Below, piece by piece: positions 4,601 to 46,556 of a DNA stretch of 64,000 nucleotides. The stretch is from contig NW_003314272.1 of NCBI RefSeq assembly GCF_000143415.4, positions 2,443,728-2,507,727 on the forward strand, given 5' to 3'. The notes below the pieces were generated by a model. It worked only from the letters and a program-made list of their open reading frames with translations, did not search any database and was not told the origin of the DNA. This stretch comes from Selaginella moellendorffii. Its lineage: Eukaryota; Plantae; Lycopodiophyta. Positions within the stretch are counted from its first letter, which is position 1. Each line of letters starts with the position of its first letter. A program made the position numbers and the translations under genes.

Positions 4601-5509
4601 TACGGAAGAAATACCAAAGATGATGAGCACGAACCTGCCAAACTAGATGGGGACGCAAGTACTCGGCGTCTGGACTGTTCTTCGGCTTCTCAATAAAAGT
4701 AAGGCGCTGCTGTGAGGCTGTATCGAACAGTTTGACACCCTCGTCATTCGCCCACGCGATAAGGCTCGTTCTCCATTTGACAGCATGGATGGGACCCTCT
4801 CCCGAGTGCAACACCTGCAAAAGAACAAAAGAAAAGGTGTAGAAAAACCGAAGTGATCGTGACAAAGCTTTGAAGAATGAAAGAAAAATGGAGAGAGCAG
4901 AGTAATCTTCACAAGTGTCGCTACCTGATCTTTGGGACCAAACCAGCCTTTGCTGTTGAGAATGAGATGCCCTGCCAGTCCCCCGCCAGCAAAACGATTT
5001 GTTTTGCAGTAGTCTGGATCCAGCGCGACGGCCTTCATTGGCCGGTGGTAGTGGAACTTCTCGTGACTGTCGGTATACAGGCTGCTCACCACCACGGATC
5101 CATCGTCACTGCAGCTCCCCACGAACTCTCCAGCGCTATCGAAGCTCAGCTCGTTCACAGTGGCAGTATGAGCAGCGAATTCCTTCACCTGGATATCCCA
5201 TTCCATTCCATTTCCATCCAAAAAAACTGATAGGAGACTCACCTGGTTTCCCTGGTAATCCAGCAAATGCACCCTGCCGCCGTGCGTTCCCAGCGCGATC
5301 ATCCGCTCGGCGACGCTGATGCACGAGGCCGTGTCGCTGGAGAGAAGAGAGGGAACACTACCTCCCAGGCGCTTGTACTTGAGGCGCGGCTCTTCATCCT
5401 CGTCATCGATCGCCTCCTGCGCCGAGGAGGAATCGTCAGCGGCGTCGTCATCGTCGTCGCATTCGTCGTCGGCATCGGCGCGCGCGAGCTCCTCCTCCTC
5501 GTCCTCCAT
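1685..5509 (-). CDS. VPS41: Vacuolar protein sorting 41 (HOPS subunit), multi-exon
   Basis: Acidic N-terminus followed by EPRLKYKRLGGSV...IALGTHGG (WD40 region), HYHRPMKAVALDPDY, clathrin-repeat helices (ELYAEFEPRLLLPFLRSSQYY), and a C-terminal RING (CCIC...CGHFYHVTC...CILC). GT-AG introns of ~50-70 nt. Stop at 1685-1687. Confidence 0.95.
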
Positions 5510-5599: not shown

Positions 5600-6988
5600 C
5601 TAGTTGTCAATGGAAAGGGACGCTGTGTCATGCTCAACGTAAGATCTGTTCTTGGAGGTTCCAGGCTTGAATTCGTATGGCCCCTGTCTTACACCCCACA
5701 CCTACAAACAAAGCGTAGAAAGAAAAAGAAGAACGAAGAGAAAGAAAAACGCAAGTTTTAGAATCGAGAGAGACTTTGAGGAACCTGATTTCCTTCGTCG
5801 TCGTAGGCGCGATCCCAGCAGTGGATCTCTCCACTTTTGAGGATTGTGAGCTCGGATGTGCACCGGGAAGCACCGTTCTGCCAAGAAACGAAGAGGAAAA
5901 TGTGAAGAACTCTAGAAAAAAAAAAGGCTTTTTTTTTCGTTACCCAGTTGTTTGGAAAGCCTCCGGGAGGTGTTGATCCTTCGTAGAGACAACGTTGGCC
6001 TCGCGCACAGGCGGAGAGATAGACGGAAGTTAAATGCTCGGAGATGTCCTTGACAATCCAAACAAAAGAGGTGAATTGTTTTCCCAGCTCGAAAGGCTTG
6101 TTGTGACTTACTCCAGGGATCTCTTCCGGCTGTGGTCGCTGATCCTTTGGCCTCTCACAGAAGTTCTTGTATTCCTCAATGTCACGAACAGCGTAGGATC
6201 CAACCTGCAGCGATCGAAAAACTTGAAAGTTTTACTCCACAACACTGGACGTGTTTACCTCCACATCGCACTTCATTTCTTTCGGACAGGGCCTCACAAC
6301 GTAGAATCTCTGGAGAGAAAATGAAAGAACTCTCTGATCTGATACATAAAAGCGTTGTTTGTGCGCCTACCTGTCTATATGGCTTATCAGGTGTTCTCCA
6401 GAATGCCTGGAAGAACGCAAAATATCATTTTTCTTGTTTCAGTGCATGAAAACCAAAAATACTCAAGAAGAGCACCTGTTCAAAGTAGAGAACTTTCGCT
6501 CCATCGTCCAGAACAGTCGCGGGGCATGCCAGCATCCTGCGATCAAAAGCTTTTCAATGTTCTTCCTGTTCTCGACAACCAGCGCGCTTACCTGAGATTG
6601 AAGTACGTCATTGGATCCCTTGCCGCTTGCTCTTGGGAAAACTACGAAAAGCAACCTCTAAGAAAAGTGGAACAAAATGATCACACAAGCAAAGATAATG
6701 GGAAGAACAAAGAAGACAAGAAGAAACAAAGCGATGGAAAGATCGAAAGGGTGATCTCTCGCTTACTTTCTCGCCTGTGAGAGCATCGGCGACGAGACGA
6801 GTGTGATCCCACCGCGTCTTTGCTTTGGTGAGCTTGCGGAGCAGAAGAACACCACCCAGCAGACATGCCGCTTTCAAGACGAAGCTGCGAACGCCGCCGC
6901 CTCCTCCGTCACCGCCGCCGACGCTCACATTTCCAGCGCCACCGGAGGATTGGAGCGAGGAGGCGTCCTCCCTGTCGCCTCCCGCCAT
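5600..6988 (-). CDS. CRL: CRUMPLED LEAF, CpcT/CpeT-family chromophore lyase-like plastid envelope protein
   Basis: Spliced exons read ...LLRKLTKAKTRWDHTRLVADALTGEK / FSQEQAARDPMTYFNLR / AFWRTPDKPYRQ / EEYKNFCERPKDQRPQPEE / RCLYEGSTPPGGFPNNW / WDRAYDDEGNQ / VWGVRQGPYEFKP. These match CRL motifs. TAG at 5600-5602. Confidence 0.92.
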
Positions 6989-7123
6989 AGCCGAGAGGGG
7001 AAGAGGACAATAAGCCCTAGATTTATGTGTGACGTGCTACCAGTCGCCCGCCACACACATTTTAAGTTTTTCTCGCGAGCGTGAGCTCAAATCGGAGCTC
7101 CGATTGGATCAATGCAGCTCGGA

Positions 7124-12113: not shown

Positions 12114-12345
12114 TCCACTTATCATTGAGACTAACAAAGCGTCCCATTCTTTTATAATCCACGATCGGCACGAGACGAACGAGGAGAAACGCTAGCGCCC
12201 TTTTGTTTTCTTTCGCTGGCCATTCTCTTGGACAGTCCAATTCTTACCGTGCTTTAAGTTTTGGAGCTATTCGTTACATTGTGGTCTCGATCGCGTGGCA
12301 AATGGCTCGATTCTAGAGGGCTAAAGTTTTCTCCATTTGCCCAGA

Positions 12346-14034
12346 ATGGGCATTTGCGTCCACTGCTCACTACTCACGGCGCTTCCAGGTCCCGTGGATC
12401 GCGACAACTCGATCGCCCGCCAGGAGCACACCTCGGATGATCCGCAAGAACTGGAGCTCCCATCGCCTAGTTTCGATAACTACGCCTCCCTCCTCCGCCA
12501 CTGCTCCCTCTCCTACGGCAAGCGCGTCCACGCGTATATTGTCTCCTCGGGGCAGGACAAGAATGTCGTGCTCAACAATCTCGTCGTCCAGATGTACGGC
12601 CGCTGCGGCAGCGTGCGCGACGCCAAGACAGCCTTTGACTCCCTCCCCGTACGGAACGTCTTCTCGTGGACCATCCTCATCGCGGCATATGCCCAGAATG
12701 GGCATCTTTCCGAGGCGCTCGTTCTCTTCCGGCAAATGGACTGCGATGGGATGGGGCCCAACGAGATAACTTTGATCACCATCTTGGGAGTTCTTGCGTC
12801 GACGAGAAGCGTCCGCGAGGCCCGCTCGCTCCACGCGCGCATCCTCCACACGCGTTTCCACTCCCATTGCCAAGTCCTCACGGCCGTGATCCACGTCTAC
12901 GGTCGCTGCCGCTGCCCACAAGACGCGCGGCACGCCTTTGACGCCATGCCCCCCCGCAAGCGGAATGTGGTGGCCTGGAACACCATGGTGGCTGCGTATG
13001 CCCAGAACGGGCATACCGCTCAGGCGTTCGAGGTGTACCGCGTGATGAGCAGCGGGGATTCGCCGGTGCGTCCCAACTCCGTCACCTTCCTTAACATCCT
13101 GTCGGCGTGTGTCGCCCCCGCGGACCTCTCCTTGGGGCGATCCGTGCACGCCGGCATCCGCGGCTGGGAGACCGACGTCATGGTCGGCACCGCACTAGTG
13201 AGCATGTACGGCAGGTGCGGATGCGTTGACGCCGCCACCGCCGCCTTCCGTGCGATGCTCGTCCGCAACCTCGTCTCGTGGAACGCCGTCATCGCCGCAA
13301 ATGCCCAGAACGGGCACGGCGCGTCGGCGGTGCTGCTGTTCCGGGAGATGAGCCTCGAGGGTGTAAAGCCCAACAGCGTGACGCTCGCGAGCGCGCTAGA
13401 GGGCTGTGCGTTTGCGGGGGCGCTGCAGCAGGGGAGGACAATCCACACACTCATGGTAGGCGGCGCCGCCCCGTTGACCTCCGAGTCTGGGGTCGTGCTG
13501 TGGACCTCGCTCCTCAACATGTACGCGAAATGCGGCACAGTCAACGACGCCGAGGGCATTTTCCACAGCATGGCGTGTAGAAATATCATCACTTGGAATA
13601 CTCTTCTCGCGGCATATGCCCAGCGTGGGCATGTGTGCGAGGTGGTGGACACCTTTGCCCTCATGCAACAGGAGGGTATCGGCGCAAACCCTATCACCTT
13701 TGTCAATGTTCTCTACGCCTTCAGCCATGCGGGGCTGCTGGAGCCGGCGGTGAAGTGCTTTGGATCGATGCTTCCAGAGTATGGGATCCAACCGGACGTG
13801 GAGCACTTCGGATGCCTGGTCGATCTCATGGGCCGTGCGGGCTGGCTCAACGAGGCCGAGGACGTGATCAAGCTCATGCCTCTCAAGGACGACGCCGTGT
13901 GGCTCGCGCTTCTCAATGGCTGCAAGATGCACCACGATTCCCAGCGCGGGGCTCAAGCAGCGGGCAAGGTCTTCAACATGGAGCTCAAGGATTCGGCGCC
14001 GTACGTGCTGCTCTCCAGCATTCACTCAAGGTGA
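12346..14034 (+). CDS. PLS-class pentatricopeptide repeat protein ending in a truncated E domain (candidate organellar RNA-editing factor)
   Basis: Intronless ORF with repeated MYGRCG...A...F..M..RNVVSWN..IAAYAQNGH motifs, then HFGCLVDLMGRAGWL..AE and W.ALLNGCKMH. Ends at SAPYVLLSSIHSR with no DYW domain. Confidence 0.93.
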   Translation: MGICVHCSLLTALPGPVDRDNSIARQEHTSDDPQELELPSPSFDNYASLLRHCSLSYGKRVHAYIVSSGQDKNVVLNNLVVQMYGRCGSVRDAKTAFDSLPVRNVFSWTILIAAYAQNGHLSEALVLFRQMDCDGMGPNEITLITILGVLASTRSVREARSLHARILHTRFHSHCQVLTAVIHVYGRCRCPQDARHAFDAMPPRKRNVVAWNTMVAAYAQNGHTAQAFEVYRVMSSGDSPVRPNSVTFLNILSACVAPADLSLGRSVHAGIRGWETDVMVGTALVSMYGRCGCVDAATAAFRAMLVRNLVSWNAVIAANAQNGHGASAVLLFREMSLEGVKPNSVTLASALEGCAFAGALQQGRTIHTLMVGGAAPLTSESGVVLWTSLLNMYAKCGTVNDAEGIFHSMACRNIITWNTLLAAYAQRGHVCEVVDTFALMQQEGIGANPITFVNVLYAFSHAGLLEPAVKCFGSMLPEYGIQPDVEHFGCLVDLMGRAGWLNEAEDVIKLMPLKDDAVWLALLNGCKMHHDSQRGAQAAGKVFNMELKDSAPYVLLSSIHSR

Positions 14035-25089: not shown

Positions 25090-28000
25090 TCAAGCTCTGT
25101 TGTGTTTGAGAAACTTGAAAGATGTGACCGCCAGCGCCGCGAAGAAGAGCGCCATCCCACACAGCGCCAGATAGTCCCAGTGGTTGCGGCTCATCTCGAT
25201 CGGTCTGGTAGCCAGCAGTCTATCCCACACGAACGCAGGCCGGGTGGTGTTGGTCCGGGTCAGGAGCTGCTCGACGTCGTGAAGCCTCTTGCAGTGGCAG
25301 CCGGGGCACGGCTGGCGGATGACGCAGCTTAAGCAGGCCGTGGTCCCAGTGTCGCAGTAGAAGGAGGTCGGGGTGAGGATGTTGATCGTGTACTGGAACG
25401 GGTTGATCCAGTAGAGCCACTTGTAGAAGCGGATCCTGTTCCTGGGAACCGAGACGCCGGACGAGGAGATCCACATGGACATGATGATGGAGGAGAAGGT
25501 GACGGCTATGGTCGGGATCGGAGCTGCGCAGGCCAGGAAGACGCCGTAGCACACCACCACCATGGTGAAGAGGAAGAGGCACGTCCAGTACTTGAGGAAC
25601 ATCGTGAAGGTATCGACTCCGACGCCGGCCATCCCGTTTGCTATCCCGACGAAGACGAACGTTCCCAGGAGGATGTATGGGATCTCCGAGACGAGCCAGG
25701 ACAGCGGGTAGAGCAGCGAGGTGTACATGCGAGCCCGGCTCTCGCGGACGTAGACCTGCCTGTCGGTGCCGAGCTGCGGGATGAGATTGTTGGCGGTGGT
25801 GGCGCAGATGAGGATGGCCTCGATGTACATGATGAGCGACGCCGACTGCATGGAGGTGGACCGCTCGACGTCGATGTTGAGGAAGAGTGTGCCGATGACG
25901 AGCGCGATGATGACAATGCCCGTGAGCCGGTTGAAAGTGTAGCGGACGTTGCGCCACAGGAACCTGGCGTTGCGGAGGAACACCATAGCGAACTGCGTCT
26001 TGTAGGGGGCGATGTAGCGGGAGTTGAGATGGTGGAGGCCGTCGTCTTTCTGGTCACGCAGGGACTGGAGCTCGGCCGCGTTTGCGAGCTGCAGTGGGCT
26101 GTTATGATATGCGGAGACGAAGTCCGCCGCGGGCTCCCGCTTCGTGGTTCCGCCACCCAGGATGTCCAGCAGGAACACCATCGGGCTCCGCCGCGGGTCG
26201 TAAGGTGGCACGCCTGGAATGGCCGTGAAATAGTCGAGGAGCTGGCTGCCGTTGGTACCGGGTGGTCCGAAGTAGACTTGCTTCCCCTCCCGCAAGACCA
26301 GCACGCTGTGGAAGAGGCCCAGTGTCTCGGCGCTGGGATGGTGCAAGGTGACGAGCAGCGTGCGTCCGTTCATGGCCACCGTTTGCAAGAGGTGCAGAAC
26401 GTTTCTCGCGCTGGCTCCGTCCAGCTGCGAAGTTGGATCGTCGAGAAACAGGATGCTGGGATTTGCTGCCAGCTCGATGGCTATGGTGAGCTTCTTGGTG
26501 ATCTCCCGCGGCCGCTTGTTTATCTGCTGGAAGACCCCGACCAGCTTGTTGCTTACGTGGGAGAGGCCCGTGAGCTCGAGTATGAGATCGACGTGACGAG
26601 CCTTGTCGGCGGAGCTTATGTGCCGCCTGAGCCGGAGGTTGGCGCTGAACTCGAGAGACTCTCGGACTGTGAGATACGGCTGGTGCATCTCGACGTTCTC
26701 GGCAAAGCCAGAGATGCGGTGGAAGCACGTCTTCTTCAGCCGGACACCGTTGACGAGTACCTCGCCTTCCGAGGGCATCCTGCCGGCCAGGCACTTGAGG
26801 AGTGTCGACTTTCCTGCGCGAGTGCTTCCGACGAGAGCTAGCATCTGGCCTGGCTTGACATAGCCGGAGATCAGGCTCAGGTGCCCTGTTGGAAGAGTGA
26901 TGTCGAAGAACGTGAGAACTAGAGGCCTCACAGGAAGATGGAGTTCCATCCACTTGGCTGCTTCTTCTTGACCGGGACCGTCGCGGAGGCTACCGTCCTC
27001 TACTCTGCTCAGCTCCTCCGGATCTGGTTTTACAGCTTCTTCGTCGGCAACTGGATGAAGCTGGCCTTTCCTGACAGGAGATGGCGCCAGCTCCGGCAAG
27101 CGGGACTTTTTGTACGCCAGGTATGCGAGGAAGTTGAGAGCGAGGATGAAGATGACGATTGCCGCGTACGCGAGCACCAGCCTTCCCCCGGAGGCTTCCA
27201 AGTCATAGAACTTGATAAAGGCCCGGCCGAGCGTGAGCCTTGGGTTTACCAAACAGAACTGGAAGTTGAGATGGCTCGTGCATGGCTGGTCGTACCGGGT
27301 CTTCATCTGAGTCGAGGAGTAGATGATGTTGCCCCAGCGCGTTGGAACGATGTAGAGCATCCATTTCCAGTAAGCGGGTGTCACACTGGGTAGCAAAATC
27401 ACGCCAGAGAAGAGAAGACACACGAGGATGAAAAGTCCTGTGAATGAAAGAAAATAAACCCAATGTTTTGTCAAAAGGTGTTTCAAACCTGCCAAAGCTG
27501 CGGCATTCTCCAGCAGCGGAGCAAATCCGCCGACGAGAAACACGAACGACGATCCCATGTATCCTATCACAAAGATCAGCGCCAAATACTGGAAGTAGTG
27601 CGCAGCATTTTCCAGTGAGAGGCCCGCGAGGAAGTACGTACACATGCTATAGATTATTGCCTGCTCAAGAGAATGACCATGTATGTGTGAAGCTTCCGAC
27701 AATCAAGCGACTCTTACCTCGAGAAGTGATTGCGGGAGACTCACGAGGCCATGAGCCACGACGTATGAAGAAACTGGGAAGAAATGCAGCTCGCGGTGCT
27801 TTTGGAAAACCGGCCGATGAATCAAGAGGTGGATTGGGAGTTGTGTGAGGTTTATAAGCATCAAGACCATCATCGAGACGAAGCCAAGGGTTCGTAGCGC
27901 AATCATCTCATATTGATCGATCTTGCCGCCTTTCTTGTAGAAGAAAGAACCAGCAAAGAGTCCAAGAACAGTAATCTGTACGAAAACGATTGTTGAAAGC

Positions 28001-30126
28001 TAAGAAAAAGTCTAGAGCTTTTCGAACCTGGAACAGCCGAAGTATGATCAGGATTTTGAAACGAATCGCAAATGTAAATTGACGCTTCACAAGGCATTGC
28101 GTAGACCATAGCCAGTCCTTCACGTTGACAAATCCAAACCGCTTTTTGTAGCACGCACCGGTTTCTTTCTGGACAGGAAAACTCCATGAGATTACCATTA
28201 ACATCTGAAGATTTGGTATGAGTTCTCACCTCTTGCATTTTACGCTCCAGTTGCACGTGAAGTGATCCTTCTCTCGAGTTTAGCAAGTCGGCAACTTTAC
28301 AAGCTTGAGCCGCCTGTTCGGCTGGAGAGCCACCTCTAACGTAGTGAGTACTACCGTCAGGTAGCACAACAGCAGTGATTTCGTCTCCCACTCGAACCGC
28401 TCCATTGGTTATGATCTCTCCGGCCTCGGAGACATTTGTCACGTAAACACCTACAAAACCTTATAAGTCGACACTAAGAGGAACACATATCGTTACCCGG
28501 GCCATTCAGCGTGTCATGCTGGATGGAGATCTCAATATCGGAGATAGTCTCGGCCATGTAAGTGTGAGTCACGTCTTTGCTGGAAACGATACGCATGACG
28601 TCTTTGAAATGGTCGGATGCTTTATAAGATACAACAAGCTCCGGAATTCCCAGTTTTGTAAAACCAGGCATCAGGTATCTAGCTCCAGAACCCGCAGAAA
28701 TATCTTGAAGGAACACAGCAGGATCGACATAGCTAGGCTTTTTATATCTGGCAGGCAACAAGGAAGTTAGTTCGTCAGGAGATAAGAGAGTTTAGACATA
28801 CCCAAGCTTGAAGAAGTAGTTTTCCACACCGTGTCGAGGACCTTGGTAGATCATCTGGCCCTCGGACAAGATAATGATCCTGTCAAAAAGCTCGAAAACT
28901 TCCGGAGCTACCTGAGCCATGCAAGTTACTAGAGCGCATTCTTGAACACGAATCACTGTGTCTAAGAGATTATGAAGCCTGTCATAAAGGCGTAACGAGT
29001 CCTCTGCCGTTGCTGGCTGATCGTATAGAAAGACTGAAAAAGTCCGCATCGCGATCTCTGCTGTCGTAAGCCTGGCTTTCGCTGATTCCTTCAGGAGAGG
29101 CCCGACCACCAAATGCTCGATTTGCTTTAAGCCGAAAGTCTGTAGAACATATTCCAGGAATGGATTGTCGCTGTCTGCCAAGTCCGGAGCAAAGCACCTG
29201 ATCATTTGGGCCGTGAGTTCCTGCGGTCGTAGCCGTCGCGTGCATTTCTCGGCAAACTCGAGAGTTTCTCGAATGGTAAGCACCGGCAAGTGGCTGATAA
29301 AAGAACAGCATTAATTGGAGTTCAGACAAGAAGAAAACAAAACAAAGATTACGTACACGTTGTGAAGGCCTGTAGCATAAGCAATCGGACGCTTGGTCTC
29401 GAGATCTGGCGTCAATACGGAGTCGTTGTATAAGACCTGGCCTTCAAACTTTACGAGCTTGCTGGGATGAAAGTGTCCGGCAAGGACCTGGTATAATCAC
29501 AGAAAGATGGATAAGTCACATTGTAATAAGAAACCACTAAATTACCTTCAAGAGAGCAGTCTTTCCACTTCCTAGAACAAAGAAAAAAAGAAAAAAACCG
29601 TGAAAATGTAGCTAGAGTTCGTTAAGTTTTGGAGAATTACCTGCCGGACCGATCACTAGAGTCATGGAGCCAGGCATAACGTAGCCACTCACGTCGTCAA
29701 GTACCTTGACACTGCTCGGTTGATCTCTTTTCTTCGCGAGAAGCTTTAGAGGACCGAGAAAGCAGCCCACAATCTTCCTTCCAAACGTTTCATAGCTCTG
29801 CGCTTGCTGCTGGGGACTGTTCACGGTCACAGTGACACCCTTGAATCTTATCACCTGCAAACGCACGCCTGGTAAAGATCTTCCCGGACAGAAAGAAAAG
29901 AACAAGGAAAATTTTAAATATCTGGTACCAGGTCATATGGATCCGTCGCAGCGTGGTACTGCTCCAGATCGCTCTTGAGCGAGCTCGATCTCGCAATGCT
30001 GAGGCTCACAGCCCTTGGCAGCTCCTCATTGACGACGAGCTCGCGGAGGGACGAGGAATTGGAGATTCTTGCGGCCTCCATTTCGTGGCCGCGATCATCA
30101 GCGCCATCATCCGCGGTGGCAGCCAT
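25090..30126 (-). CDS. Full-size ABCG/PDR-like protein A (NBD1-PDZ-TMD1-NBD2-TMD2) with degenerate ATPase motifs
   Basis: VLDDVSGYVMPGSMTLVIGPAG/SGKTALLK, LTIRETLEFA, FELFDRIIILSEGQMIYQGPR, TMD1, GYVKPGQMLALVGSTRAGKSTLL, LTIAIELAANPSILFLDDPTSQLD, TMD2. The listed 870-aa ORF reads through one short intron near 27440-27490. Confidence 0.88.
28230..28575 (-). other. PDZ-like domain within ABCG-A
   Basis: Spliced translation THTYMAETISDIEISIQHDTLNGP/GVYVTNVSEAGEIITNGAVRVGDEITAVVLPDG...CKVADLLNSREGSLHVQLERK follows the PDZ pattern G-phi-phi-V..V...G.A...G.phi.VGD.I.AV...V...L.....phi.L..ER. Confidence 0.72.
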
Positions 30127-30633
30127 CCCCGATCGACGATCGGGAGCTGTATTCTCACAGAAATTCTCCAAATTTCCTAGATCAAGGAGAAAGAAGCGCG
30201 GAGATCACTGGAAGAAGCTCTACCTGGCCCAGATTTCCAGCTCCCATGACTGCGTTGAAATTCGTAAAAGCCCTATCTCTCTGGCAGGAGAGAGACATCC
30301 TAGTCAACTCAAACACCTCCATATATAGCTCCCATATCTCTAGAAATATTATAGTATTTCTTCCCAGATGTTAGTCCACGACGCTCGCAAATATCCAAGC
30401 AAGCCGCCACCATCGATCTTAATTTTTTCTTCCGAAGTTTCGCACGAAAGCTGAGTGAAAAAAGAAAAGAAAAAAATTGTCGTATTGAAGTACGTAAGCC
30501 TTGAGCTCAATCGTGAAAGGTCCACCATCTAGGAAGGAAATTTAGAAAACTACCAAGGAAATTGCAAAATACCTCACTATAGTCCTCCAAAGTTCTCGTC
30601 ATAGCCCAGAGCGTCGCGAGAACGTCGTGAGTT

Positions 30634-33600
30634 TTACTTCCTGTTGTGCTTGAGTCGCGCGAAGGATACGATCGCCAGGACCGCGAAGAGCAGCACCATG
30701 AAAGCCAGAGCCAGGAAGTCCTTCCCAATCCTGTGCTTCTCAAGAACTCTTGCCTTGCTCAGCCTCTCCCACACGAAGCTTGCTCGAATGAACTGGCTGA
30801 AGACCGGCCCATAGATTTGCACCAGCTTCTTCTCCAAGTCGACCAGCCTCTTGCACTTGCATCCAGGACAACTCGCGCCGATCGTGCAAGCATTGCACGC
30901 CGGAGTTCCGGTGTCGCAGTGGAACGCAGTCGTGGTGAGGATATTGACGGCGTACTGATACGGGTTGATCCAGTAGAGCCACTTGTAAAACTGGATGTTG
31001 TAGCGCGGAATGGAGACCCCCGAGGACGCCACCCACACCGAAGTCGATATCGACGAGACCGTCATGGCCAGCAGCGAGTTTGGAAACAGCAGCGTGACGA
31101 AGATGCCGAAGTAAGTCACGGCCAGGGTGAAGAGAAACAGGCCGATCCAGTACTGGACGAACGCGGACACGGAGTCGACGGCAAGGTTGGCCAGGCCGTT
31201 TCCAATCCCGACGAAGGCGAGTGTGCCGAGCAGCAAGTATGGAACCTCGGCGATGGCCCAGGACAGCGGATACAGCATCGGGGAGTACATCCTTGCTCGG
31301 TTCTCTCGATAGTAGACGAGCCTGTCCGTTCCGAGCTGCGGTATAACGTTGTTGGCCGTGAGCCCGGAGATCATAATCAGCTGGATATACGGGAAGAGGC
31401 TGGCGGACGTCATGGACAGCAGCTTTTCCACGGAGATGTTGAGGTAGAGTGTTCCCATGACGAGAGCGACGAGAATGGTCCCAAGGAGGCGGCGGAGTGT
31501 GTATGTCACGTTCCTCCATAAGAAACGCTGGTTCCGGAGGAACACCATCGCTGCCTGCGTCTTGAACGAAGCTGCGTATCGAGAGCTGATGTTCTTGAGC
31601 TCGGGATCTGGCTGCTGCTTGAGAAGCCTCTCGAGTACCTCCGCGTTTGCCTGATGCAGAGAACTGGACTGGTACAGCTGAGAGAAGTCGTGCAATGGCT
31701 TTCGCTCCTTTATGCCTCCGCCAAGTGCTCCGAGGATGTAGGTGACAGGGTTCCACTGCTCGTTGTAAGGTGGTGAACTCGGCACTGACGTGAAGTAGTG
31801 CAGCACTTGCTTGCAGTTCCAGCCAACGGGGCCGAAATAGGCTGTGTGACCGCCAATAGCTAGTACCAACACATCGTTAAACACGCTGAGTGCCTCTCCA
31901 CTGGGATGATCCAGCATGCTGATGATAGTACGCCCGCTTAAAGCAACACTCTGGAGCAGTCTCAGAATCTCTCTGGAGCTAGTGCCATCCAGCTGCGCCG
32001 TGGGATCCTCCAAGAAAAGTATGCCGGGGTTGACGGCGAGTTCCACAGCTATAGTAAGTTTCCTTCTTGTCTCCTGGATTCGAGCAGTGACGAGCTTCAA
32101 GTTGCCAACAAGTTGATTGCTCATAGCTGACAATCCCAAAAGTTCCAGGACCTCCGTCACATGCCGAGCTTTGTCGTCCGCACTGATTTGTTTTCCCAGC
32201 CTGAGATTTGCACTGAACTCCAGGGACTCTCTGACAGTAAGATACTGTTGGTGAGCTTCCAACTTCTCAGCAAATCCAGATATCCGGCAGATGGCGAGTC
32301 TGTCCAGTTTCAAACCGTTTAAAGAAACGTCACCCTCGAGCTTGCCGGGTGGTAGCCTGCCTGCAATGCAGTTGAGCAACGTTGCCTTGCCCGACCGTGT
32401 GCCCCCAGCAATTGCTAGCATTGTCCCTGGCTTGGCATAGCCAGAGACGTTGTCCAATACTACTTGCTCAAAAGAAGATCGCACGCCCCGCCTGGTGAAC
32501 CTCAGCTGGTGAAAGGAGAGCGTTACAGGCTTGACAGATAACTTGCAAGTCCACCTCCCAGGTGCTCGTGTACCTCCGTTCTCTGCTTGTTCCACATTGT
32601 TGGGGCCGCGAACATACTGTTTCTGCCTTGGTATAGCCGATGCCGTTTCCTGTATCCGGACTTTGCTGTACGCAAGATATGCCAAATAAATGAGAACCAG
32701 AATATATGCAACGATGACTCCGAATGCGAGAACAAGCCTTTTTCCACCAGCTTCTAGCTCATAATACTTGAGAAATGCTTGGCCAAGAGAAAGTGTTGGA
32801 TGAAGAAGACAGAATGGATACGTGCGGTAAAGTGTGCAAGGTAATTCATAGCGGTTATCGGTTTGAGTCGATGTAAAAATGACATTTCCCCAACGAGTTG
32901 GTGTAATGTATAGAACCCATCGCCAGTACCAGCTGATTACACTTGGAATAATAGTGGAGCCCGAAAATAGAAGGTTCAAAGCGACAAATGAACCTGTAAA
33001 AACAGTTGCTGAAGCTACATTATCTCAGGAAAAGACATACCTCCCATCGTTGTGGCTACTTCCAGCATTGGTGCAATGGCACCTACCAACAACATCCAAA
33101 GTGAGCCCAAATAAGCAGTGACAAAAATCAATCCTAAGTACTGAACATAATGTGCTGCCTTCTCTTTAGACAGCGAAGCTAAAAAATACACGCACAAACT
33201 GTAAAGCAGTGCCTGTAATACTTTCAACGCTCAAGTCATACGAGAAAATAATAGCATACCTCTATAACTGATTGAGGAATGTTCAAAATGGCATGTGCTA
33301 CTACATACGAAGAAACAGGAAATAAGTGTTGACCTTGCTGCTTGTAGAAAACGGGTCGATGAAACACTATATGGACCGGAAGCTGGACGATGTTGATTAA
33401 CATTAAAGTCATCATAGATATAAATCCAATCGTTCTCATAGAATTCATTTCGTATTGATCAAGTCTGCCTCCTTTGTGATAGAACAAGGAACCAGTGAAC
33501 AAGCCGACTAAAAGAATCTGAAGAGTCAGCATTTAGCATGACTAAATCGGACGCTGTCATTACCTGGAGAAGTCGTACAATAGCTAATCCCTTAAGTCGC

Positions 33601-35654
33601 ATTACAAATATTGTTTGACGCCGGATCAAACACCAGGTCGACAACCACCACGAACAAAATTGTTGCCATCCGAAGTGTCTTTGATAATACATAGCATTGC
33701 CTGCCTGCAAACTAAAGACATAAAGGCACTTTCAAATTACGAGATGCCCAACCTCATCGAGATTTCGCTCCAACTGTAAAAGGATGGAGCTATACGATGC
33801 CTTTAACATGTAGGAGACTTTCGAAGCTGAATCCGAGCTCTCAACATACTGAAATTCTTCATTACGCTCGCAAACTCCTGTCACCTTGTCGCCAACACGA
33901 ACGCAAGCACAACTTTCTACACTCGGAGCTTCCGTCACCAACACATCTGCAACGGATCACTGCATTTTAGTAGCAAAAGAACACATATTCTTTTCCATAC
34001 CATTCCCTTGCAGCGAAGCACGAATGCTAGAAGTTCTGAATAAGGTTGCTTGAGTCGCCTTTTCACTTGAAACAAGCCGAAAAACGTCTTTATAGTAGTC
34101 CGATCCTTTATAGAACTTTATAAGCTCCTCAATACTAAGCGATGAAGGCTGCTGTGAATACTGTCCACCCTCGCCAGCTGCAATATCCTGTAAAAATGTT
34201 CCAGATTCTACATGAGCGGGCTTCTTGAACCTGCCAGGCAAAAATAAAACGAAGAACAAAGTGTGCCAAACACATACCCAAGCTTTAAGAAGTAGCTCTC
34301 GACGCATTCACGCGGGCCTTGATAGAGAACCTCACCCTCGCTGAGAAGGATAACACGGTCGAAAAGATCGAACGATTCCGGTGAAATCTGAACCAGCGAT
34401 ATGACGGCGGCACAATGCTGTACGTGAACCACGCTTTGCAGCATTTGAAGCAAGTCATACGTGATAAGCGAGTCCTGTCCAGAACTAGTCTGATCATACA
34501 GCAACACAGAATATGTACCCATAGCAATCTCCGCAGTTGCCAGTCTGTTTCGGTCGCTATCCTTGATGCTATCAGCAAGAGTCCCAACCCGTTCGTTTTC
34601 AATCTTTTTGAGACCAAACATGTGTAGGATGTAGTCCACGTACGAGTCCCGGCCCTGTACAGCATTGGACTGTGGCATACAACGCTGCCATAGAGCACAC
34701 CGTTGAACAAACTCGATAGTTTCTCGGACTGTGAAAAACGGCAAATGCCTGCAAGTGTGCCAGTTTATACGCTGAGAAACATCAACGAGCGTACTTACAC
34801 GTTGTCGTGTTGAGTCACATAAGCGATCGGCCGCTTTATAGCAAGTCTGGGCGACAAAGGGTCGTTGTTGTAAAGCACAACGCCCTCCAGCCTGAGTCGT
34901 CTGTTGGGACGTAGCTTTCCTCCCATCACCTGTTATCACCACTGTCTGTAGAATTAACAGCCAATGTAGCATATGAAACAAAGCATTTCATATCTCCAAA
35001 CAATCACCATGCTACCTTGAGGAGAGTGCTCTTCCCACTGCCTGTTTAGAAGGAAAAGGTCTCAAAAGAAACAAAGAGCAAGGTCACGAACCTGGCGGAC
35101 CGAGAACAAGAGTCATGGAACCCGGCATCACATAGCCGCTCACGTCCTTGAGAACCTTGATCTTGCTGGATTTCTTCTTGGAACGAGCCAGCTTAATGCA
35201 AACTCCTAGAAGGCAACCAAGTAGCTTCTTGCCAAAGGTATCATAGCCCGGACCAACTTCGGTGTGATCCATCGTAACACTGATGGCTTTGAAGCGAAGA
35301 ACCTGAATGGAACGTAAGATCCCTCCACGGTAGAAAAAGGGAACTTACTAGAGTCCAGGGAGGGGATTTCTCCTTGGAAGTGGATGGAGATTCATGGCTG
35401 ACATCACCAAAGGAGCGCCTTGTGGCACACATTGGACAAAATCCCGGGCCAGCATTTTCCTCCGGGCTCCTCGCCCGTGGCGCCGACTCATCGACCGGCG
35501 ATGGAGGCGATTCTTCCTGTTCCTGAGAGCTAGAAGAGCTGCTCATCGGGTGCGGCATGGCGATCGGCGCGTAGAGATCCTCGACCAGCGACGCCGACAG
35601 CCGGAGCGAGAAGGGCCTCACCACCGAGGACTTGCGCGATGATCCATGCTCCAT
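30634..35654 (-). CDS. Full-size ABCG/PDR-like protein B, tandem paralog with the same architecture
   Basis: VLKDVSGYVMPGSMTLVLGPPG/SGKSTLLK, FDLFDRVILLSEGEVLYQGPR, TMD1, VLDNVSGYAKPGTMLAIAGGTRSGKATLL, LTIAVELAVNPGILFLEDPTAQLD, TMD2. Intron positions I checked are shared with paralog A. Confidence 0.88.
33753..34060 (-). other. More divergent PDZ-like domain within ABCG-B
   Basis: KATQATLFRTSSIRASLQGN/DVLVTEAPSVESCACVRVGDKVTGV...SKVSYMLKASYSSILLQLERN. Same position and same intron phases as in paralog A. Confidence 0.6.
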
Positions 35655-41729: not shown

Positions 41730-44700
41730 GCACCCCCTCCTCAAGAACGAGTGGAACGAGGACGTGAATGAGAACGAAGAGGAGGATGAGATGGGTGGCG
41801 AGGGACGGGAGATGGAGAAAAAGAATGAGGACTGGGACGAGAAGGATAGCGGCGATGGAAGTCTTGAACAAGGTCAGGAGAATGAATCAGGTTGTCCGCA
41901 AGTTCCCAAGTGCGTTCTTCAGGTCCATAACCCTTCCAGTCGACCAGATAGTAGAGTTTAGACCGTGAGATCTTGGAATCAAGGATGTCCTGAACCTCAT
42001 ACTCAGACCCATCCTCGAGCTGCACTGGTGGAGGCTGAGGAATGACCCGATTTGGAATAGGACTGGGAATATAAGGCTCAAGGAGAGAAGAGTGAAAAAT
42101 GGGGTGAATTTGATAGGAGGAAGGAAGTGCAAGGCGATAAGTAACAGGATTAATGATAGCAGTGATAGGGAAAGGACCGAGGCGTTTGAAATCGAGTTTG
42201 GGACATGGCTTGGTGGTGGAGCTATTTCGCCTGAGGAGCCAGACTTTATCCCCAATATTGTAAGGGGGACAATCCTGACGATGGGCATTGGCAAATGTTT
42301 TGTGAGATTCTTGAGCACGATGAAGGTGGAAGGAGATGGAGTTGTGGATTTCCTGGAGGTTGGAGACAAATGTCTCAGAGCGGGGATTTGAATGAGAGGA
42401 TTCGGATGGAGAAGAAAGTGAGAGATTGAATCGCGGATTTCGGCCAGAGTTCGCAAAGAAGGGGGAAACTCGAAGAGAGGAGTGAATAGAGTTGTTATAG
42501 GAGAACTCAGCAAGGAGAAGGATATCGAACCAGTCATCCTGATGATAGTTGATGAAGCACCTCAGGAATTGTTCTAACGTCTGAATCATTCGCTCGGACT
42601 GTCCATTAGTTTGAGGATGATATGCCGAAGAAAGGTTGGCCTTCACTCCAAGAAGCTGCAAAAACTGTTGCCAAAAATGAGAGATGAACTGAGGTCCCCG
42701 ATCCAAAACAACATCTGCAGGAATCCCATGAAGTTGGAAAATTTCCCTGAATACCAGTTTTGCCATGTCCTCGCCCGAAAACTCCTTGGTACATGGCAGG
42801 AAGTGCGCCATCTTTGTGAAGCGATCCACCACGACTAAAATGCTGTTGATGCCTCCAGAATTCGGAAGATCACTCAAGAAATCCATGGAGATGGATTCCC
42901 GAGGACCTAAAGGGACCGGGAGGGAACGAAGCAATCCTGAAGGAAGGTGGCGAGGTACCTTATTTTGGGCGCAAGTGTCACAGGAGGTAACAAAAGTTTT
43001 GATGTAGTCGTCCATGTAAGGCCACCAAAAGTCCCGTGCAACCAGCTCATAGGTCTTTGCGATGCCGAAGTGACCAACAGTCGGGCTATCGTGGCACGCC
43101 ATCAGGACCAACCTTTGAGCATCACCTTCAGGAACGTAAAGCTGCTCCCCACGGTACAACAAGCCATCTAAGAACTCAAACTCGTCAAATCACTGGTAGT
43201 CGGGAGTCACTAGGTGTCCAGCCTGAAGATGGGGGAAAATGTTGCTGGCGAGGTTATCGGATTGAAGATCGTTTCTGATCGCATCCATCAAGGAGGAGTC
43301 CTGAGGGGCCAGGGAAATTGCCATAACTTGAAGCCGATCAAGACTAAGGATAACTTGATGCTATTGATCGAAGGCAAGATTACCAGGCCTGAGACTAAGA
43401 TAGGAGCACCTTGAAAGAGCATCAGGAAGGCCTTGAAGCTTTCTAGGTCTGTACTTGATAATAAAGTCAAACCGACTCAGGAATTGTGCCCACCTTGCTT
43501 GACGACGGCTCAAAACTCGGGAAGTGGCAAAGTACTCGAGATTTTTGTGATCTGTCCAGACTATTGTTTGATGGCCCGCCCCCTTCAAGAAATGGCACCA
43601 CTCTCCAAAGGAATCCACGATGGCAAGGAGCTCCTTGTCGTGGATTTCGTAATTGATCTCTACAGGCTGGAATTTCCGAGAATGGAAAGCGATCGGATGA
43701 AGTTCGTGATCCGTTCCGAGTTGAGACAGCACAGCACCGATGGCGAAGTCGAAGGCGTCAGCCTTGATGAAGAAAGGTTGTGAGGGATCAGTGTGGATCA
43801 AGACGGGAGCAGAACTGAAGGCCGCCTTAAGTGTGTCAAAGGCCTGCTGGGCAACAGTAGACCAAGAGAAGGGAACATCCTTGCGAGTGAGATGCGTGAG
43901 AGGAAGGACAATGTCAGAGTAGTGAGCAATGAATTTGCGGTAGAAGTTGGTGAAGCCAAGGAAAACCTGAATGTCTAACATTGATTGTGGAGGCTCCCAT
44001 TCGAGAATAGTCTTGACTTTGGCAAGATCCATCGTGATACCCTCAGGAGTGACAATGTACCCAAGGAACTCCACAGACTGCTGATCGAAGGAACATTTCT
44101 CAAGTTTCGCATATAGGCTGTGTTCTCGCAGCTTCGCCAGCACCTTGCATACATGTTCGTCGTGCTCCTCTTGATTTTTTGAGTAGATGAGGATGTCATT
44201 GAGGTAGACGATCACCATCTGATCAAGAAACTCCCGAAAGACATCGTTCGCCATGTGTTGGAAAACTACTGGAGCATTTGTCAAGCCAAATGGCATGACA
44301 GTGTACTCGAAGTGGCCATAGCGGGTTCGAAACGCAGTCTTCCATTCATCACCAGGCTGGATCCGGATCAGGTTGTATGTTCCACGGAAGTCGATCTTGG
44401 TGAAGAAGTGGGCACCGCCGAGGCATTCCAACAGGTCCGAGATCAGGGGCAGCGGATAACAGTTCCGAACAGTCACCTTGTTCAAACCTCGATAGTCGAT
44501 GACTAGCCACAAACTCCCATCCTTCTTCTTGACAAAGAAGATAGGCACTCTAGCTAGGGACTGCAAATGCTGAATGTACCCGGAGGCAAGGTTCTCATCC
44601 ACGTACTCTTTGAGGGCCCTAAGCTCGAACAGGGATAACCCGTAGATAGGTCCCCACGGAGGTGACGCTCCTTCCTGTAAATTAATGGAACAATCATAAG

Positions 44701-46556
44701 GCTGATGAATAGGCAGTACACTAGCTTTTTTCTTGTCAAACACATCCCCAAAATCATGATACTTCTCAGGAAGACTGACAAGAGAAACATGCAAAGCAAA
44801 AAGGAAAATAGGTTCTTCATGAAGGAGTTCTTTCATAGTGATTGTGGAGATAGGAGGAGGCATACGACTAAATGGAATGATGAGACGAGGATACTGTCCA
44901 GTGTAAGATGGAGGAGAGGAAAAAGAAGAGGGTGAAAACTTTGAGTCAAGAACAGAACCTCGATTTGAGTTTAGGGAACTTTTCCTGATTCAGACTCAAT
45001 GAACAGCAGAGGAAGCCGTGGGAGATGGTGATGTGGGAGAGATGAGCTGTAATTCCTTCCAACAGATCTGAGGCTGATGTAGTTGGAACCAAGGAAGACC
45101 GAGCACCACAGAGGAGGACTTGCTGTTGATGATGTTGAAAGCGATATTGGTGACGGTGCACCCGATGTGTACTCGAACGGGCAATGTTTCCCTAAGTCCA
45201 GAAGATGGAGACACAAAATGCCCGCCGATGCCTTCAACTCTCATATCCCATATGGTACAAGAAAGAGGAACGTGATGTCGGGCAGCAAAGTCCGTGTCCA
45301 TGAAGCAGGAAGTTGCACTCGAGTCTAGTAGTGCCAGAGCCTTGAGTCCTAATTGTCCGGTGAAAGAAAGGAGACATGGGATGCAGAAGTTGTGGGAATT
45401 GGTGGTGGCTTTGATGAAAGGTGGTGAGGAGCTTGATAAAGAAGAAAAGTGATTTTTATTCGGGGAGTCCAAACAGACAGCTCCTACTCTGTTTGGACAG
45501 GGTTGTTTCCCGACTGCAACAAAGGTGGATTTTGAGGCAGAGTGGACTCGAGCAGTCGGGGAGGCTTCTTGGGACACATAGTTGCTTTGTGATTAGGATC
45601 AGCACAGTAGAGGCAAAGATTATGAGATATTCGACGTTGCTTCTCAGCAAGACTCAACTTCCCTTTGATGAGTCGGGGAGTACCAGAAATATCCATCGAG
45701 ACCAGAGCAATAGGTTCAAGAGTATGCCCCGAAGACTCAAGCTGGGATTCCTGAGTCTGGGACGGAAAAACAGCGGCACGGCGACTTTCCTGACGACACT
45801 CAAAGAGACAATTGTCACATCGAACAGCTTTGTTGATGGCATCTGATAGGTCCTTGGGATCCTCCATGGTGAGCAACAAATCCTTGACACCGTTGTTGAG
45901 GCCGAAACGAAATTGGTCAATCAGGGCCCGCTCATCCCACTGAGTGTCCAAGGCAAGGAGTTGGAACTCTGCAGCGTAGATCGAGGTAGGACAAGACCCC
46001 TAAGAGAGACGTCTCATCTTTGTGGTAACAGCCCGAACCCGATCCGTCTCGCCAAAACATGCTTCGAGCTTCTCTTTGAACAATTGAAGATCCATCAGCT
46101 TCGGAACCACAACCCCTTTCATGCTCTTCTCTAGAAGAGGAGAAAACCATGACAAAGCTGCACCTTCGAGCAACGTCCCAATCGCGCCAATTTGAGACTC
46201 GGAAGTGGGGTACCGCTGATGTTGAAGTGCAAAGATCAGCTCCATCTGGTTTAGGAATCCGCAAAGCTCCTAACGCTTGCCTGAAAATTTCGCCGGGAAA
46301 CTCACCTTCAGTTCAGGAACTTTGCTGGATCCTTGAGCTGAAAGTGAAGCAAGCTCCTGCTGCATGCGAAGAAGGATCACCTTCAGCTCGGTATTCTTAG
46401 ACTGGATTTTTGCAAGGACTTCGGCAAAGAAATCAGGATGGCTTGGAGACTCCATCAGCAAAAAGAAAGAAAAAGGGGGAAAAAAGCCAAAGGCAGTCAA
46501 ACAATCAAAACAAGCTAAAGGAAGAAAAATGAAAAAAAACACAATCTGAATCAAAC

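What the first reader, a model, noticed from the sequence alone, without database searches (positions are those of the whole stretch)
25090..35654. Tandem pair of PDZ-containing full-size ABCG proteins: an architecture I do not recognise from any described ABC family
Seen: between the end of NBD1 (…FLQDI…Y..SD.) and the first TMD1 helix, both paralogs carry an ~90-aa insert. In A it reads DIEISI…GVYVTNVSEAGEIITNGAVRVGDEITAV…CKVADLLNSREGSLHVQLER; in B, DVLVTEAPSVESCACVRVGDKVTGV…SKVSYMLKASYSSILLQLER. Both have a phase-1 intron inside the insert and a phase-0 intron right after it. Established: PDR/full-size ABCG proteins have only a plain linker here. PDZ domains are scarce in plants, and transporters such as CFTR and MRPs bind separate PDZ adaptors rather than carrying one. 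From memory the tail resembles the plant MET1/ZKT-type PDZ (…GPLLMQMEKR), which needs checking. Inference: an old domain capture that predates the duplication and gives the membrane protein its own cytosolic peptide-binding or scaffolding module.
Basis: partly seen in the sequence, partly recalled or inferred. Interest (0 to 1): 0.92.

Follow-up and report, generated by a model that had tools for sequence, protein, structure and literature searches.

The report
PDZ-fold domain inside plant ABCG transporters
Two neighbouring Selaginella genes encode full-size ABCG membrane transporters with a small PDZ-type docking domain built in between the first ATP-binding domain and the first membrane domain; the same insert marks an old, apparently undescribed land-plant branch of this family, though these two copies carry worn versions of it.

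Summary
The window is Selaginella moellendorffii. Two tandem minus-strand genes of 11 exons each (A 25090-30126, 1483 aa, identical to EFJ30268/XP_002969152; B 30634-35654, 1499 aa in my model) encode NBD-TMD-NBD-TMD ABCG proteins. Each has an extra 81-96 residues between NBD1 and TMD1.

- **Transcription:** Spliced contigs from four studies contain the insert exons and confirm the phase-1 intron inside the insert in both genes and the phase-0 intron after it in B.
- **Fold:** The AlphaFold2 model (pLDDT 77) matches only PDZ domains: Foldseek top 50, and VIA-align Z 7.2-9.1 in an exhaustive search of 48,161 chains. hhalign against a Pfam-verified PDZ gives 90% probability. Pfam itself stays below threshold.
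- **Age:** The insert is older than the tandem duplication. It defines a clade running from liverworts through lycophytes, Taxus and a magnoliid to monocots and eudicots. Canonical PDRs have a plain linker at this position.
- **Caveats:** Copies A and B have lost the GLGF-type carboxylate-binding loop that their orthologues keep. Their PDZ region is only 34% identical, about the level of a plain linker. All vascular-plant members also have degenerate ATPase motifs, while liverwort members are canonical.

Peptide binding is an inference and is doubtful for A and B. I found no paper describing the architecture. The scan had already noted it on other pieces of this genome.

The parts
25090..30126 (-). 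Gene A, a full-size ABCG (NBD1, PDZ-like domain, TMD1, NBD2, TMD2), 1483 aa. Exons: 30126-29929, 29854-29641, 29571-29546, 29487-29357, 29293-28802, 28747-28497, 28450-28230, 28168-28028, 27975-27718, 27660-27489, 27437-25090.
   Evidence: Splice model. It is identical to P0001 (EFJ30268.1 / XP_002969152.1 / D8RD84). Six of its introns are confirmed by spliced contigs in four runs. Pfam finds ABC_tran and ABC2_membrane.
28239..28572 (-). PDZ-like domain of A (residues 413-508), encoded by 28572-28497 (end of exon 6) and 28450-28239 (exon 7). It is interrupted by the 46-nt phase-1 intron 28451-28496 and followed, after 9 more coding bases, by the 61-nt phase-0 intron 28169-28229.
   Evidence: AF2 model with pLDDT 77 and pTM 0.73, order beta-beta-beta ... 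beta-beta-alpha-beta. Foldseek top 50 are all PDZ. VIA-align gives Z up to 9.1, rmsd 2.6-3.3 over 80-91 residues. Pfam PDZ scores E 0.005, 17.7 bits, below the 23.2-bit cut-off. The joint 28448/28495 (+2) appears in all four runs.
30634..35654 (-). Gene B, the tandem paralogue, 1499 aa in my model. Exons: 35654-35349, 35302-35092, 35041-35016, 34929-34799, 34748-34278, 34230-34001, 33946-33753, 33704-33564, 33517-33260, 33212-33041, 32993-30634.
   Evidence: Splice model. RefSeq isoform X1 (P0161, 1317 aa) equals the model from residue 183 onward, and isoform X2 (P0002) matches its C-terminal part. Joints 33946/34001, 33703/33752 and 33517/33564 appear in spliced contigs. The five 5' exons were not covered by the laid stretch.
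33762..34058 (-). PDZ-like domain of B (residues 440-520), encoded by 34058-34001 (end of exon 6) and 33946-33762 (exon 7). It is interrupted by the 54-nt phase-1 intron 33947-34000 and followed by the 48-nt phase-0 intron 33705-33752. It is shorter than A's because of three loop deletions.
   Evidence: Alignments A2 and A3. Mapping from A. The family profile scores it at E 5e-20. Pfam finds nothing on its own. B's domain was not folded separately.
28609..29854 (-). NBD1 of A (about residues 67-400). Walker A is intact (GPAGSGKT). The signature motif is lost and Walker B reads ...FLYDQ (catalytic Glu replaced by Gln).
   Evidence: Motif alignment against liverwort and outgroup ABCGs.
26152..26901 (-). 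NBD2 of A (about residues 881-1130). Walker A is GSTRAGKS, the signature is degenerate, and Walker B is ILFLDD (catalytic Glu replaced by Asp). In B the equivalent is ILFLED.
27438..27488 (-). A 51-nt in-frame, stop-free intron in TMD1 of gene A. A plain ORF scan reads straight through it, which is why the ORF comes out at 870 aa.
   Evidence: GT..AG ends and comparison with B. It is absent from P0001. It lay outside the stretch laid with reads.

Best explanation
[quoted passage not shown] The domain was acquired once, before liverworts and vascular plants split. It has since been kept as well as the NBDs and TMDs in seed plants, and rather less well in liverworts. Genes A and B are a Selaginella-lineage tandem duplicate of this architecture.

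**Inferred.** Ancestrally the domain is an interaction module held next to the NBD1/membrane interface. It would dock a partner's C-terminal tail or an internal hairpin, or possibly a lipid head group, onto the transporter, doing in cis what NHERF-type adaptors do in trans for CFTR. Most members still have the GLGF-type loop needed for that.

In vascular plants both ATP sites lost their signature motifs and catalytic glutamates. These proteins are therefore more likely ATP-binding, non-pumping or weakly pumping scaffolds or regulators than drug pumps.

In the two window copies the carboxylate-binding loop is gone and the domain has drifted as fast as a linker. Here it most likely survives as a folded spacer or an intramolecular or non-canonical contact surface, not as a classical peptide-binding PDZ.
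For: **Gene models and transcription**
- A is identical to P0001.
- Spliced contigs from four studies include the insert exons of A and B, with GT-AG joints at the predicted positions.

**Fold**
- AF2 model: pLDDT 77, pTM 0.73.
- The Foldseek top 50 are all PDZ, E 2e-3 to 2e-2.
- VIA-align gives Z 8-9.1 over 80-91 residues.
- An independent exhaustive search of 48,161 PDB representatives returns only PDZ domains in its top 50, Z 7.2-9.1.

**Sequence**
- hhalign of the family profile against a Pfam-verified PDZ: 90% probability, E 1.6e-6, with GLGL aligned to GLGL and VQVGD to VRVGD.
- A PDB profile search puts four PDZ domains on top, three of Scribble and one of MPDZ.
- Pfam PDZ is the top, sub-threshold hit in A and in three of six seed-plant orthologues scanned.
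- In 1.84 billion representatives, the only protein from outside the family identified among the hits at E <= 1e-3, besides two leucine-rich-repeat proteins, is a multi-PDZ protein.

**Insert versus plain linker:**

**Distribution and single origin:**. In the tree the PDZ-bearing clade has SH-aLRT 100 and A+B are sisters at 100.

**Conservation:** the PDZ region is 76-81% identical among seed plants, equal to NBD1 and TMD1, against 48-55% for linker 2. Between A and B it is 34%.

**ATPase motifs:** canonical in liverworts, degenerate in every vascular member.
Against: - No binding was tested.
- Pfam's PDZ models stay under their gathering scores.
- Foldseek E-values are modest and Z about 9 is only just above the tool's stated noise band. 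The weight comes from every hit being a PDZ and covering the whole domain.
- The short helix alpha-A is not called by DSSP in the model.
- The N-terminal half model (NBD1-PDZ-TMD1) was too poor to place the domain (pLDDT 52).
- B's shortened domain was not folded on its own.
- The outgroups in the tree contained no canonical plant PDRs. Monophyly relative to those is therefore untested.
- The runs used are only guessed to be RNA, although intron-less contigs are hard to explain otherwise.
Confidence: 0.6

Rival explanations
1. One reading: in A and B the domain is a working classical PDZ. It binds C-terminal peptides of partner proteins and scaffolds them onto the transporter.
For: The PDZ fold is predicted for A. 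The core residues (V-x-V-G-D-x-x-T, and L-Q-L-E-R in the last strand) are kept in both copies. Both genes are transcribed and correctly spliced.
Against: The carboxylate-binding loop is SDIEISI in A and SSIRASL in B, with no G-hydrophobic-G-hydrophobic pattern, whereas orthologues keep PGLGLSL, KPLGLKL or SIGLSV. B has three loop deletions. A and B are only 34% identical across the domain, no better than a plain linker.
Confidence: 0.15
2. In A and B the PDZ-like block is a decaying relic with no role of its own. It is tolerated as linker, while the third Selaginella paralogue (P0149) keeps the ancestral function.
For: Its divergence rate equals that of linker 2. The GLGF loop is lost. There are deletions in B. 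A better-conserved third paralogue exists in the same genome.
Against: The reading frame, both flanking splice sites and all core hydrophobic and structural residues are kept in both copies after a deep duplication (branch lengths 0.54-0.61). AF2 still predicts a confident fold for A. No copy has lost the block.
Confidence: 0.2
3. The block is not homologous to PDZ domains. It is a family-specific small beta-rich linker domain that merely resembles one.
For: Pfam scores are below threshold. The profile search of PDB gives E-values of only 0.06-0.4.
Against: Every one of the top 50 structural matches in two different searches is a PDZ domain aligned end to end. hhalign gives 90% probability with the diagnostic GLG-hydrophobic and GD motifs in register. 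A multi-PDZ protein is hit at E 5e-4 in an exhaustive library search.
Confidence: 0.04

Closest known systems
Full-size ABCG / PDR transporters (yeast Pdr5, plant PDR/ABCG29-43 type, Dictyostelium and oomycete ABCGs)
   Same: Reverse NBD-TMD-NBD-TMD order. Pfam ABC_tran plus ABC2_membrane, twice. A Cys-rich last extracellular loop. 25-32% identity over most of the length.
   Different: An extra 81-105-residue PDZ-fold domain sits in linker 1; canonical members have 81-118 residues there against 160-193 in this family. Vascular-plant members, A and B included, lack both signature motifs and both catalytic glutamates. The clade is separate from all outgroups sampled.
Canonical metazoan-type PDZ domains (MPDZ, NHERF1, PSD-95, Scribble, Par-3)
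   Same: Same fold and strand order. Z 8-9.1, rmsd 2.6-3.3 over 80-91 residues. The family consensus has the GLG-hydrophobic loop and the hydrophobic-x-x-GD-x-hydrophobic motif in register.
   Different: It is embedded inside a polytopic membrane protein, not a soluble adaptor. Sequence identity is only 10-24%. It falls below Pfam thresholds. Seed-plant members have an extra roughly 15-20-residue loop after strand B. A and B lack the carboxylate-binding loop.
CFTR/MRP with NHERF/PDZK1 adaptors
   Same: An ABC protein coupled to a PDZ module at the cytosolic membrane face. This comparison rests on established knowledge; PDB hits include NHERF1 PDZ bound to CFTR and to transporter tails.
   Different: There, the transporter carries the PDZ-binding tail and the PDZ sits on a separate protein. 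Here the PDZ is part of the transporter chain, and the family shows no conserved C-terminal PDZ-binding motif (the C-termini vary).
'V1-Type' early-diverged full-size ABCGs of Cho et al. 2020 (PMC8359288)
   Same: Described there as an early-diverged full-size ABCG type present in charophytes, mosses, Selaginella and Amborella. This fits the position and taxon range seen here.
   Different: Identity with that group could not be verified, because no supplement with accessions is held. That paper mentions no PDZ (0 occurrences) and says the type is missing from other angiosperms. The present clade, by contrast, is found in many monocots and eudicots.

Membership tests
PDZ domain (Pfam PF00595 / PDZ-like clan) | Fold: a five- to six-stranded beta sandwich with a long helix alpha-B packed against strand beta-B, in canonical (non-permuted) order | tested here: met
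   AF2 model of A with pLDDT 77. All top-50 matches in Foldseek and in two VIA-align searches are PDZ domains, Z up to 9.1, covering 80-91 residues. The short helix alpha-A is not called by DSSP.
PDZ domain (Pfam PF00595 / PDZ-like clan) | Sequence match above Pfam's curated gathering score | tested here: not met
   A scores 17.7 bits against a 23.2-bit cut-off (E 0.005). B has no hit. Of six seed-plant orthologues scanned, three give a sub-threshold PDZ-family hit, up to 17 bits. Profile-profile comparison does reach 90% probability, E 1.6e-6.
PDZ domain (Pfam PF00595 / PDZ-like clan) | Carboxylate-binding loop with an x-hydrophobic-G-hydrophobic ('GLGF') motif before strand beta-B | tested here: not met
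   A has S-D-I-E-I-S-I and B has S-S-I-R-A-S-L. The motif is present in relatives: PGLGLSL (seed plants), KPLGLKL (liverworts), SIGLSV (third Selaginella paralogue).
PDZ domain (Pfam PF00595 / PDZ-like clan) | Binds C-terminal or internal peptide ligands in the beta-B/alpha-B groove | not testable with these tools
   No candidate ligand is known, so no complex job was sent.
Full-size ABCG (PDR-type) ABC transporters | Domain order NBD-TMD-NBD-TMD with ABC_tran and ABC2_membrane domains | tested here: met
   Pfam hits on the large exons of A and B and on relatives. Full-length models.
Full-size ABCG (PDR-type) ABC transporters | At least one catalytically competent ATP site (Walker A, Walker B with catalytic Glu, and the signature motif of the opposite NBD) | tested here: not met
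   In A and B both signature motifs are degenerate. Walker B is ...YDQ in NBD1 and ...LDD or ...LED in NBD2. Both Walker A motifs are present. Liverwort members have every motif. Actual ATPase activity was not measured.
   No MET1 sequence was available by reference. The one plant PDZ among the structural hits was the LSF1 complex 8j5d, at Z 7.4.

The most novel reading that the evidence does not exclude
Vascular-plant PDZ-ABCGs, including A and B, are not pumps at all. They would be ATP-binding but hydrolysis-dead membrane scaffolds or sensors, derived from an active liverwort-type transporter, in which the built-in PDZ-fold domain recruits or gates a partner. That would make them an ABC 'pseudo-transporter' signalling class conserved for more than 400 million years and lost from Arabidopsis.
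Probability: 0.25. Interest if true: 0.85.

Novelty: new variant of a known kind. Interest (0 to 1): 0.62.

Why it matters
ABC transporters are normally coupled to PDZ scaffolds through separate adaptor proteins. A PDZ fold written into the transporter chain itself, and kept from liverworts to flowering plants, is a domain architecture I could not find described.

The clade is missing from Arabidopsis according to the hit lists here, and from other model families according to an earlier scan note. That probably explains why it has gone unstudied.

The family also offers a natural before-and-after pair. Liverwort members have intact ATPase motifs, and vascular-plant members have both sites degenerate, yet both carry the same insert. 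This makes testable the question of what an ABCG does once it stops hydrolysing ATP.

For the two genes in this window the message is more sober. They are the most eroded copies of the domain.

Tried and rejected
- **Pfam on raw exon ORFs** gave nothing, because the domain is split by an intron.
- **AF2 of the N-terminal half of A** (residues 60-730, 11-sequence alignment) gave pLDDT 52 and pTM 0.44. That is too poor to say where the PDZ docks, so I draw no conclusion from it.
- **Two word-indexed searches with liverwort inserts** returned only liverworts. This says nothing about mosses, ferns, hornworts or charophytes.
- **LRR hits** (P0141, P0147) in the exhaustive search are leucine-rich-repeat proteins, which I read as spurious matches.
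- **Short hits P0139 and P0140** looked like free-standing small proteins. They are exons of an intron-rich, bryophyte-like ABCG on metagenome contigs.
- **Supplement of Cho et al. 2020:** not held, so I could not check whether their V1-Type equals this clade.
- **Atlas feature search:** gave only weak leads (scores of 0.80 or less), several of them PDZ clusters.
- **Complex prediction:** not used, because no specific partner is claimed.
- **An artefact of annotation or assembly:** rejected on RNA-derived contigs and deep conservation.
Full report
**What is in the window.** The best database match to the large last exon is a Selaginella moellendorffii protein. On the minus strand I assembled two tandem genes by hand from open frames and GT-AG sites.
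- Gene A (30126-25090) has 11 exons and gives 1483 aa. It is identical to P0001 = EFJ30268.1 / XP_002969152.1 / D8RD84.
- Gene B (35654-30634) has the same 11-exon structure and gives 1499 aa. RefSeq's isoform X1 (1317 aa) equals my model from residue 183 onward, and isoform X2 covers the C-terminal 1100 residues.

Both are NBD-TMD-NBD-TMD proteins with ABC_tran and ABC2_membrane domains. They are 50% identical overall. One 51-nt intron in A (27438-27488) is in frame and free of stops, so a plain ORF scan reads through it.

**Checking the observation.** In A the extra block is residues 413-508, encoded by 28572-28497 and 28450-28239. In B it is residues 440-520, encoded by 34058-34001 and 33946-33762. 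In both genes a phase-1 intron splits the block and a phase-0 intron follows it.

I laid contigs of four runs from four different studies on window 28150-34120 (5,971 letters). All four runs show the joints 28448/28495, 28747/28802, 29293/29357, 29485/29544, 29570/29640 and 29852/29927 in A. In B, all four show 33703/33752 and three show 33946/34001. Each joint has CT..AC ends on the plus strand, which is GT..AG on the gene strand, and each lies at the predicted exon borders. The phase-0 intron after A's insert (28169-28229) lay at the edge of the laid stretch and was not bridged. The runs are only guessed to be RNA, but intron-less contigs show they derive from spliced transcripts. The insert exons are therefore in the mRNA. 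One run shows an alternative acceptor 10 nt further in for B's next intron (33507 instead of 33517).

**The block is an insert, not a stretched linker.** I aligned 9 family members with 12 canonical full-size ABCGs from Dictyostelium, fungi, oomycetes and others. The distance from the FLQ[DE][IV] anchor after NBD1 to the first TMD1 helix is 81-118 residues in 11 of the canonical proteins and 160-193 in the family. The canonical sequences are gapped exactly across the block. The twelfth canonical protein (P0046) has a long unrelated insertion elsewhere in the linker. The second linker, between NBD2 and TMD2, has no such block.

**Is it a PDZ domain?**
- **Pfam alone does not say so.** PF00595 is the best hit for A, but at 17.7 bits against a cut-off of 23.2 (E 0.005). 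B has no hit. Three of six seed-plant orthologues give similar sub-threshold PDZ hits.
- **Profile and structure methods do.** A 12-sequence family profile searched against PDB sequences puts three Scribble PDZ domains and an MPDZ PDZ domain on top, at E 0.06-0.4.
- **hhalign** of that profile against a Pfam-verified PDZ of an unrelated multi-PDZ protein gives 90% probability and E 1.6e-6 over 80 columns. GLGL aligns with GLGL and VQVGD with VRVGD.
- **AlphaFold2** on A residues 405-515 with the family alignment gives pLDDT 77 and pTM 0.73. The strand/helix order is three strands, two strands, a long helix, then a last strand.
- **Structure searches.** Foldseek against PDB returns PDZ domains in all top 50 places (E 2e-3 to 2e-2). 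VIA-align re-scoring gives Z 8-9.1 with rmsd 2.6-3.3 over 80-91 residues. An independent all-against-all search of 48,161 PDB representatives again returns only PDZ domains in the top 50, at Z 7.2-9.1.

Each single number is modest. The unanimity and the end-to-end coverage make the fold assignment firm. The topology is the canonical, non-permuted one.

**Distribution and age.** The family profile was run exhaustively against 1.84 billion representative proteins and found only 30 hits at E <= 1e-3. The full-length hits all belong to the ABCG family. Most of the rest are short proteins of 62-220 aa. Two of these were shown to be exons of an ABCG gene, and one carries an ABC-family-G name although filed under a lizard. 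I did not identify the others. Two hits are leucine-rich-repeat proteins, which I read as spurious, and one is a genuine multi-PDZ protein.

Named members are:
- four liverworts: two Riccia species, Marchantia polymorpha and Calypogeia;
- lycophytes: Selaginella A, B and a third paralogue on another scaffold, plus Diphasiastrum;
- Taxus, the magnoliid Tasmannia, several grasses and many eudicots.

Two short metagenome 'proteins' turned out to be the PDZ exon of an intron-rich, bryophyte-like orthologue. On that contig the PDZ exon sits between the NBD1 and TMD1 exons.

In a quick maximum-likelihood tree, all PDZ-bearing proteins form one clade (SH-aLRT 100). The clade splits into liverworts and vascular plants. 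A and B are sisters (100) inside the vascular group. The outgroups did not include canonical plant PDRs, so the clade's position relative to them is open.

**How well the domain is kept.** Among seed plants the PDZ region is 76-81% identical. That equals NBD1 and TMD1 and is far above linker 2 at 48-55%. Among liverworts it is 64%, between the NBDs and TMD1 (75-86%) and linker 2 (50%), and level with TMD2 (67%). Between A and B it is only 34%, the same as linker 2 (38%) and well under the NBDs and TMDs (51-58%).

The loop that binds the ligand's carboxylate in classical PDZ domains reads PGLGLSL in seed plants, KPLGLKL in liverworts and SIGLSV in the third Selaginella paralogue. It reads SDIEISI in A and SSIRASL in B. 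B also has three loop deletions. The core residues (V-x-V-G-D-x-x-T, the conserved Tyr, and L-Q-[LV]-E-R in the last strand) are kept everywhere.

**ATP sites.** An earlier scan note on this same stretch said that both NBDs look dead. I tested this. Liverwort members have canonical Walker A motifs, SGGE and LSVEE-type signatures, and Walker B LLLDE / ILFLDE. Every vascular-plant member has lost both signatures. NBD1 Walker B ends in DQ, NBD2 Walker B is LDD, LED, LDN or LEE, and seed plants also alter the NBD2 Walker A. The stem of the vascular clade is long (1.09). The PDZ insert therefore predates the loss of the catalytic motifs.

**How it most likely works.**
- **Shown:** a PDZ fold lies in linker 1 and is transcribed, ancient and conserved.
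- **Inferred from the known topology of ABCG2/Pdr5-type proteins:** the domain lies in the cytosol, next to NBD1 and the elbow helix at the membrane face.
- **Inferred:** ancestrally it is an interaction module that holds a partner's tail or hairpin, or a lipid, on the transporter. In vascular plants, with both ATP sites degenerate, the protein probably acts as an ATP-binding scaffold or regulator rather than a pump.
- **For A and B specifically:** the lost carboxylate loop and linker-like divergence make classical peptide binding unlikely. A role as a folded spacer or in non-canonical or intramolecular contacts is my preferred reading. Outright decay is the main rival.

I could not place the domain in three dimensions, because the N-half model was too poor.

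**Comparison with what is known.** The proteins are full-size ABCGs by architecture but fail the catalytic-motif test. The insert is a PDZ by fold and profile but fails Pfam's threshold, and in A and B it fails the GLGF-loop test.

CFTR and MRP with NHERF adaptors is the nearest functional analogy, with the PDZ in trans there and in cis here. Cho et al. 2020 (PMC8359288) describe an early-diverged 'V1-Type' of full-size ABCG in charophytes, mosses, Selaginella and Amborella. That may be this clade, but they do not mention a PDZ and I could not verify the identity.

Four full-text searches combining PDZ with ABCG, PDR or plant terms found nothing relevant. None of the precomputed Pfam lists for family members includes a PDZ family.

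The scan itself has already reported the same architecture on other pieces of this genome. My results agree with those notes and were obtained independently here.

**Verdict.** I class it as a new variant of a known kind (full-size ABCG with an integrated PDZ-fold domain), of moderate to high interest. The better experimental entry points are the Marchantia and seed-plant members, not A and B.

Noticed in passing
window 41741-45577 (-): A Ty3/gypsy chromovirus-type retrotransposon lies upstream of gene B. ORFs carry RVT_1 + RNase H (43361-44863) and integrase + SH3_Tf2-1 + chromodomain (41741-43162). The AT-rich stretch at 36-40 kb (GC 0.29-0.32) lies between it and gene B.
   Followed up: partly
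window 12337-14034 (+): An intron-less PPR protein ORF of 565 aa with a weak E-motif match at its C-terminal end, in a GC-rich patch (GC 0.60).
   Followed up: partly
window 4643-5509 (-) and 63183-63959 (-): Exons with a Vps41-type beta-propeller and with a C1 (phorbol ester/DAG-type) domain. These are neighbouring genes unrelated to the finding.
   Followed up: no
window 30529-30572 and 33507/33517: One run's contig removes a 44-nt GT-AG intron downstream of gene B's stop codon, which I read as a 3'-UTR intron. Another run uses an acceptor 10 nt further in for B's intron before exon 9 (33507 instead of 33517), which would shift the frame.
   Followed up: no
window 28150-34120, run X7: Contigs of run X7 differ from the window at 32 positions (all substitutions), while runs X5 and X6 show none and X1 shows one. 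This is consistent with the second haplotype or another accession. The database also holds allelic copies of A and B on a second scaffold (P0157, P0162).
   Followed up: no
P0168 (Marchantia), P0133/P0167 (Riccia), P0169 (Calypogeia): Liverwort members of the PDZ-ABCG clade keep fully canonical Walker A, signature and Walker B motifs in both NBDs. All vascular-plant members have lost them. The insert therefore predates the loss.
   Followed up: yes
L001 3305-13088 (JGI metagenome contig, GC 0.41): An intron-rich eukaryotic ABCG gene, 50-80% identical per exon to the Marchantia member and with its own PDZ exon at 6754-7005. It was called as many small 'hypothetical proteins' in the metagenome annotation. 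The source organism is unknown, probably a bryophyte.
   Followed up: partly
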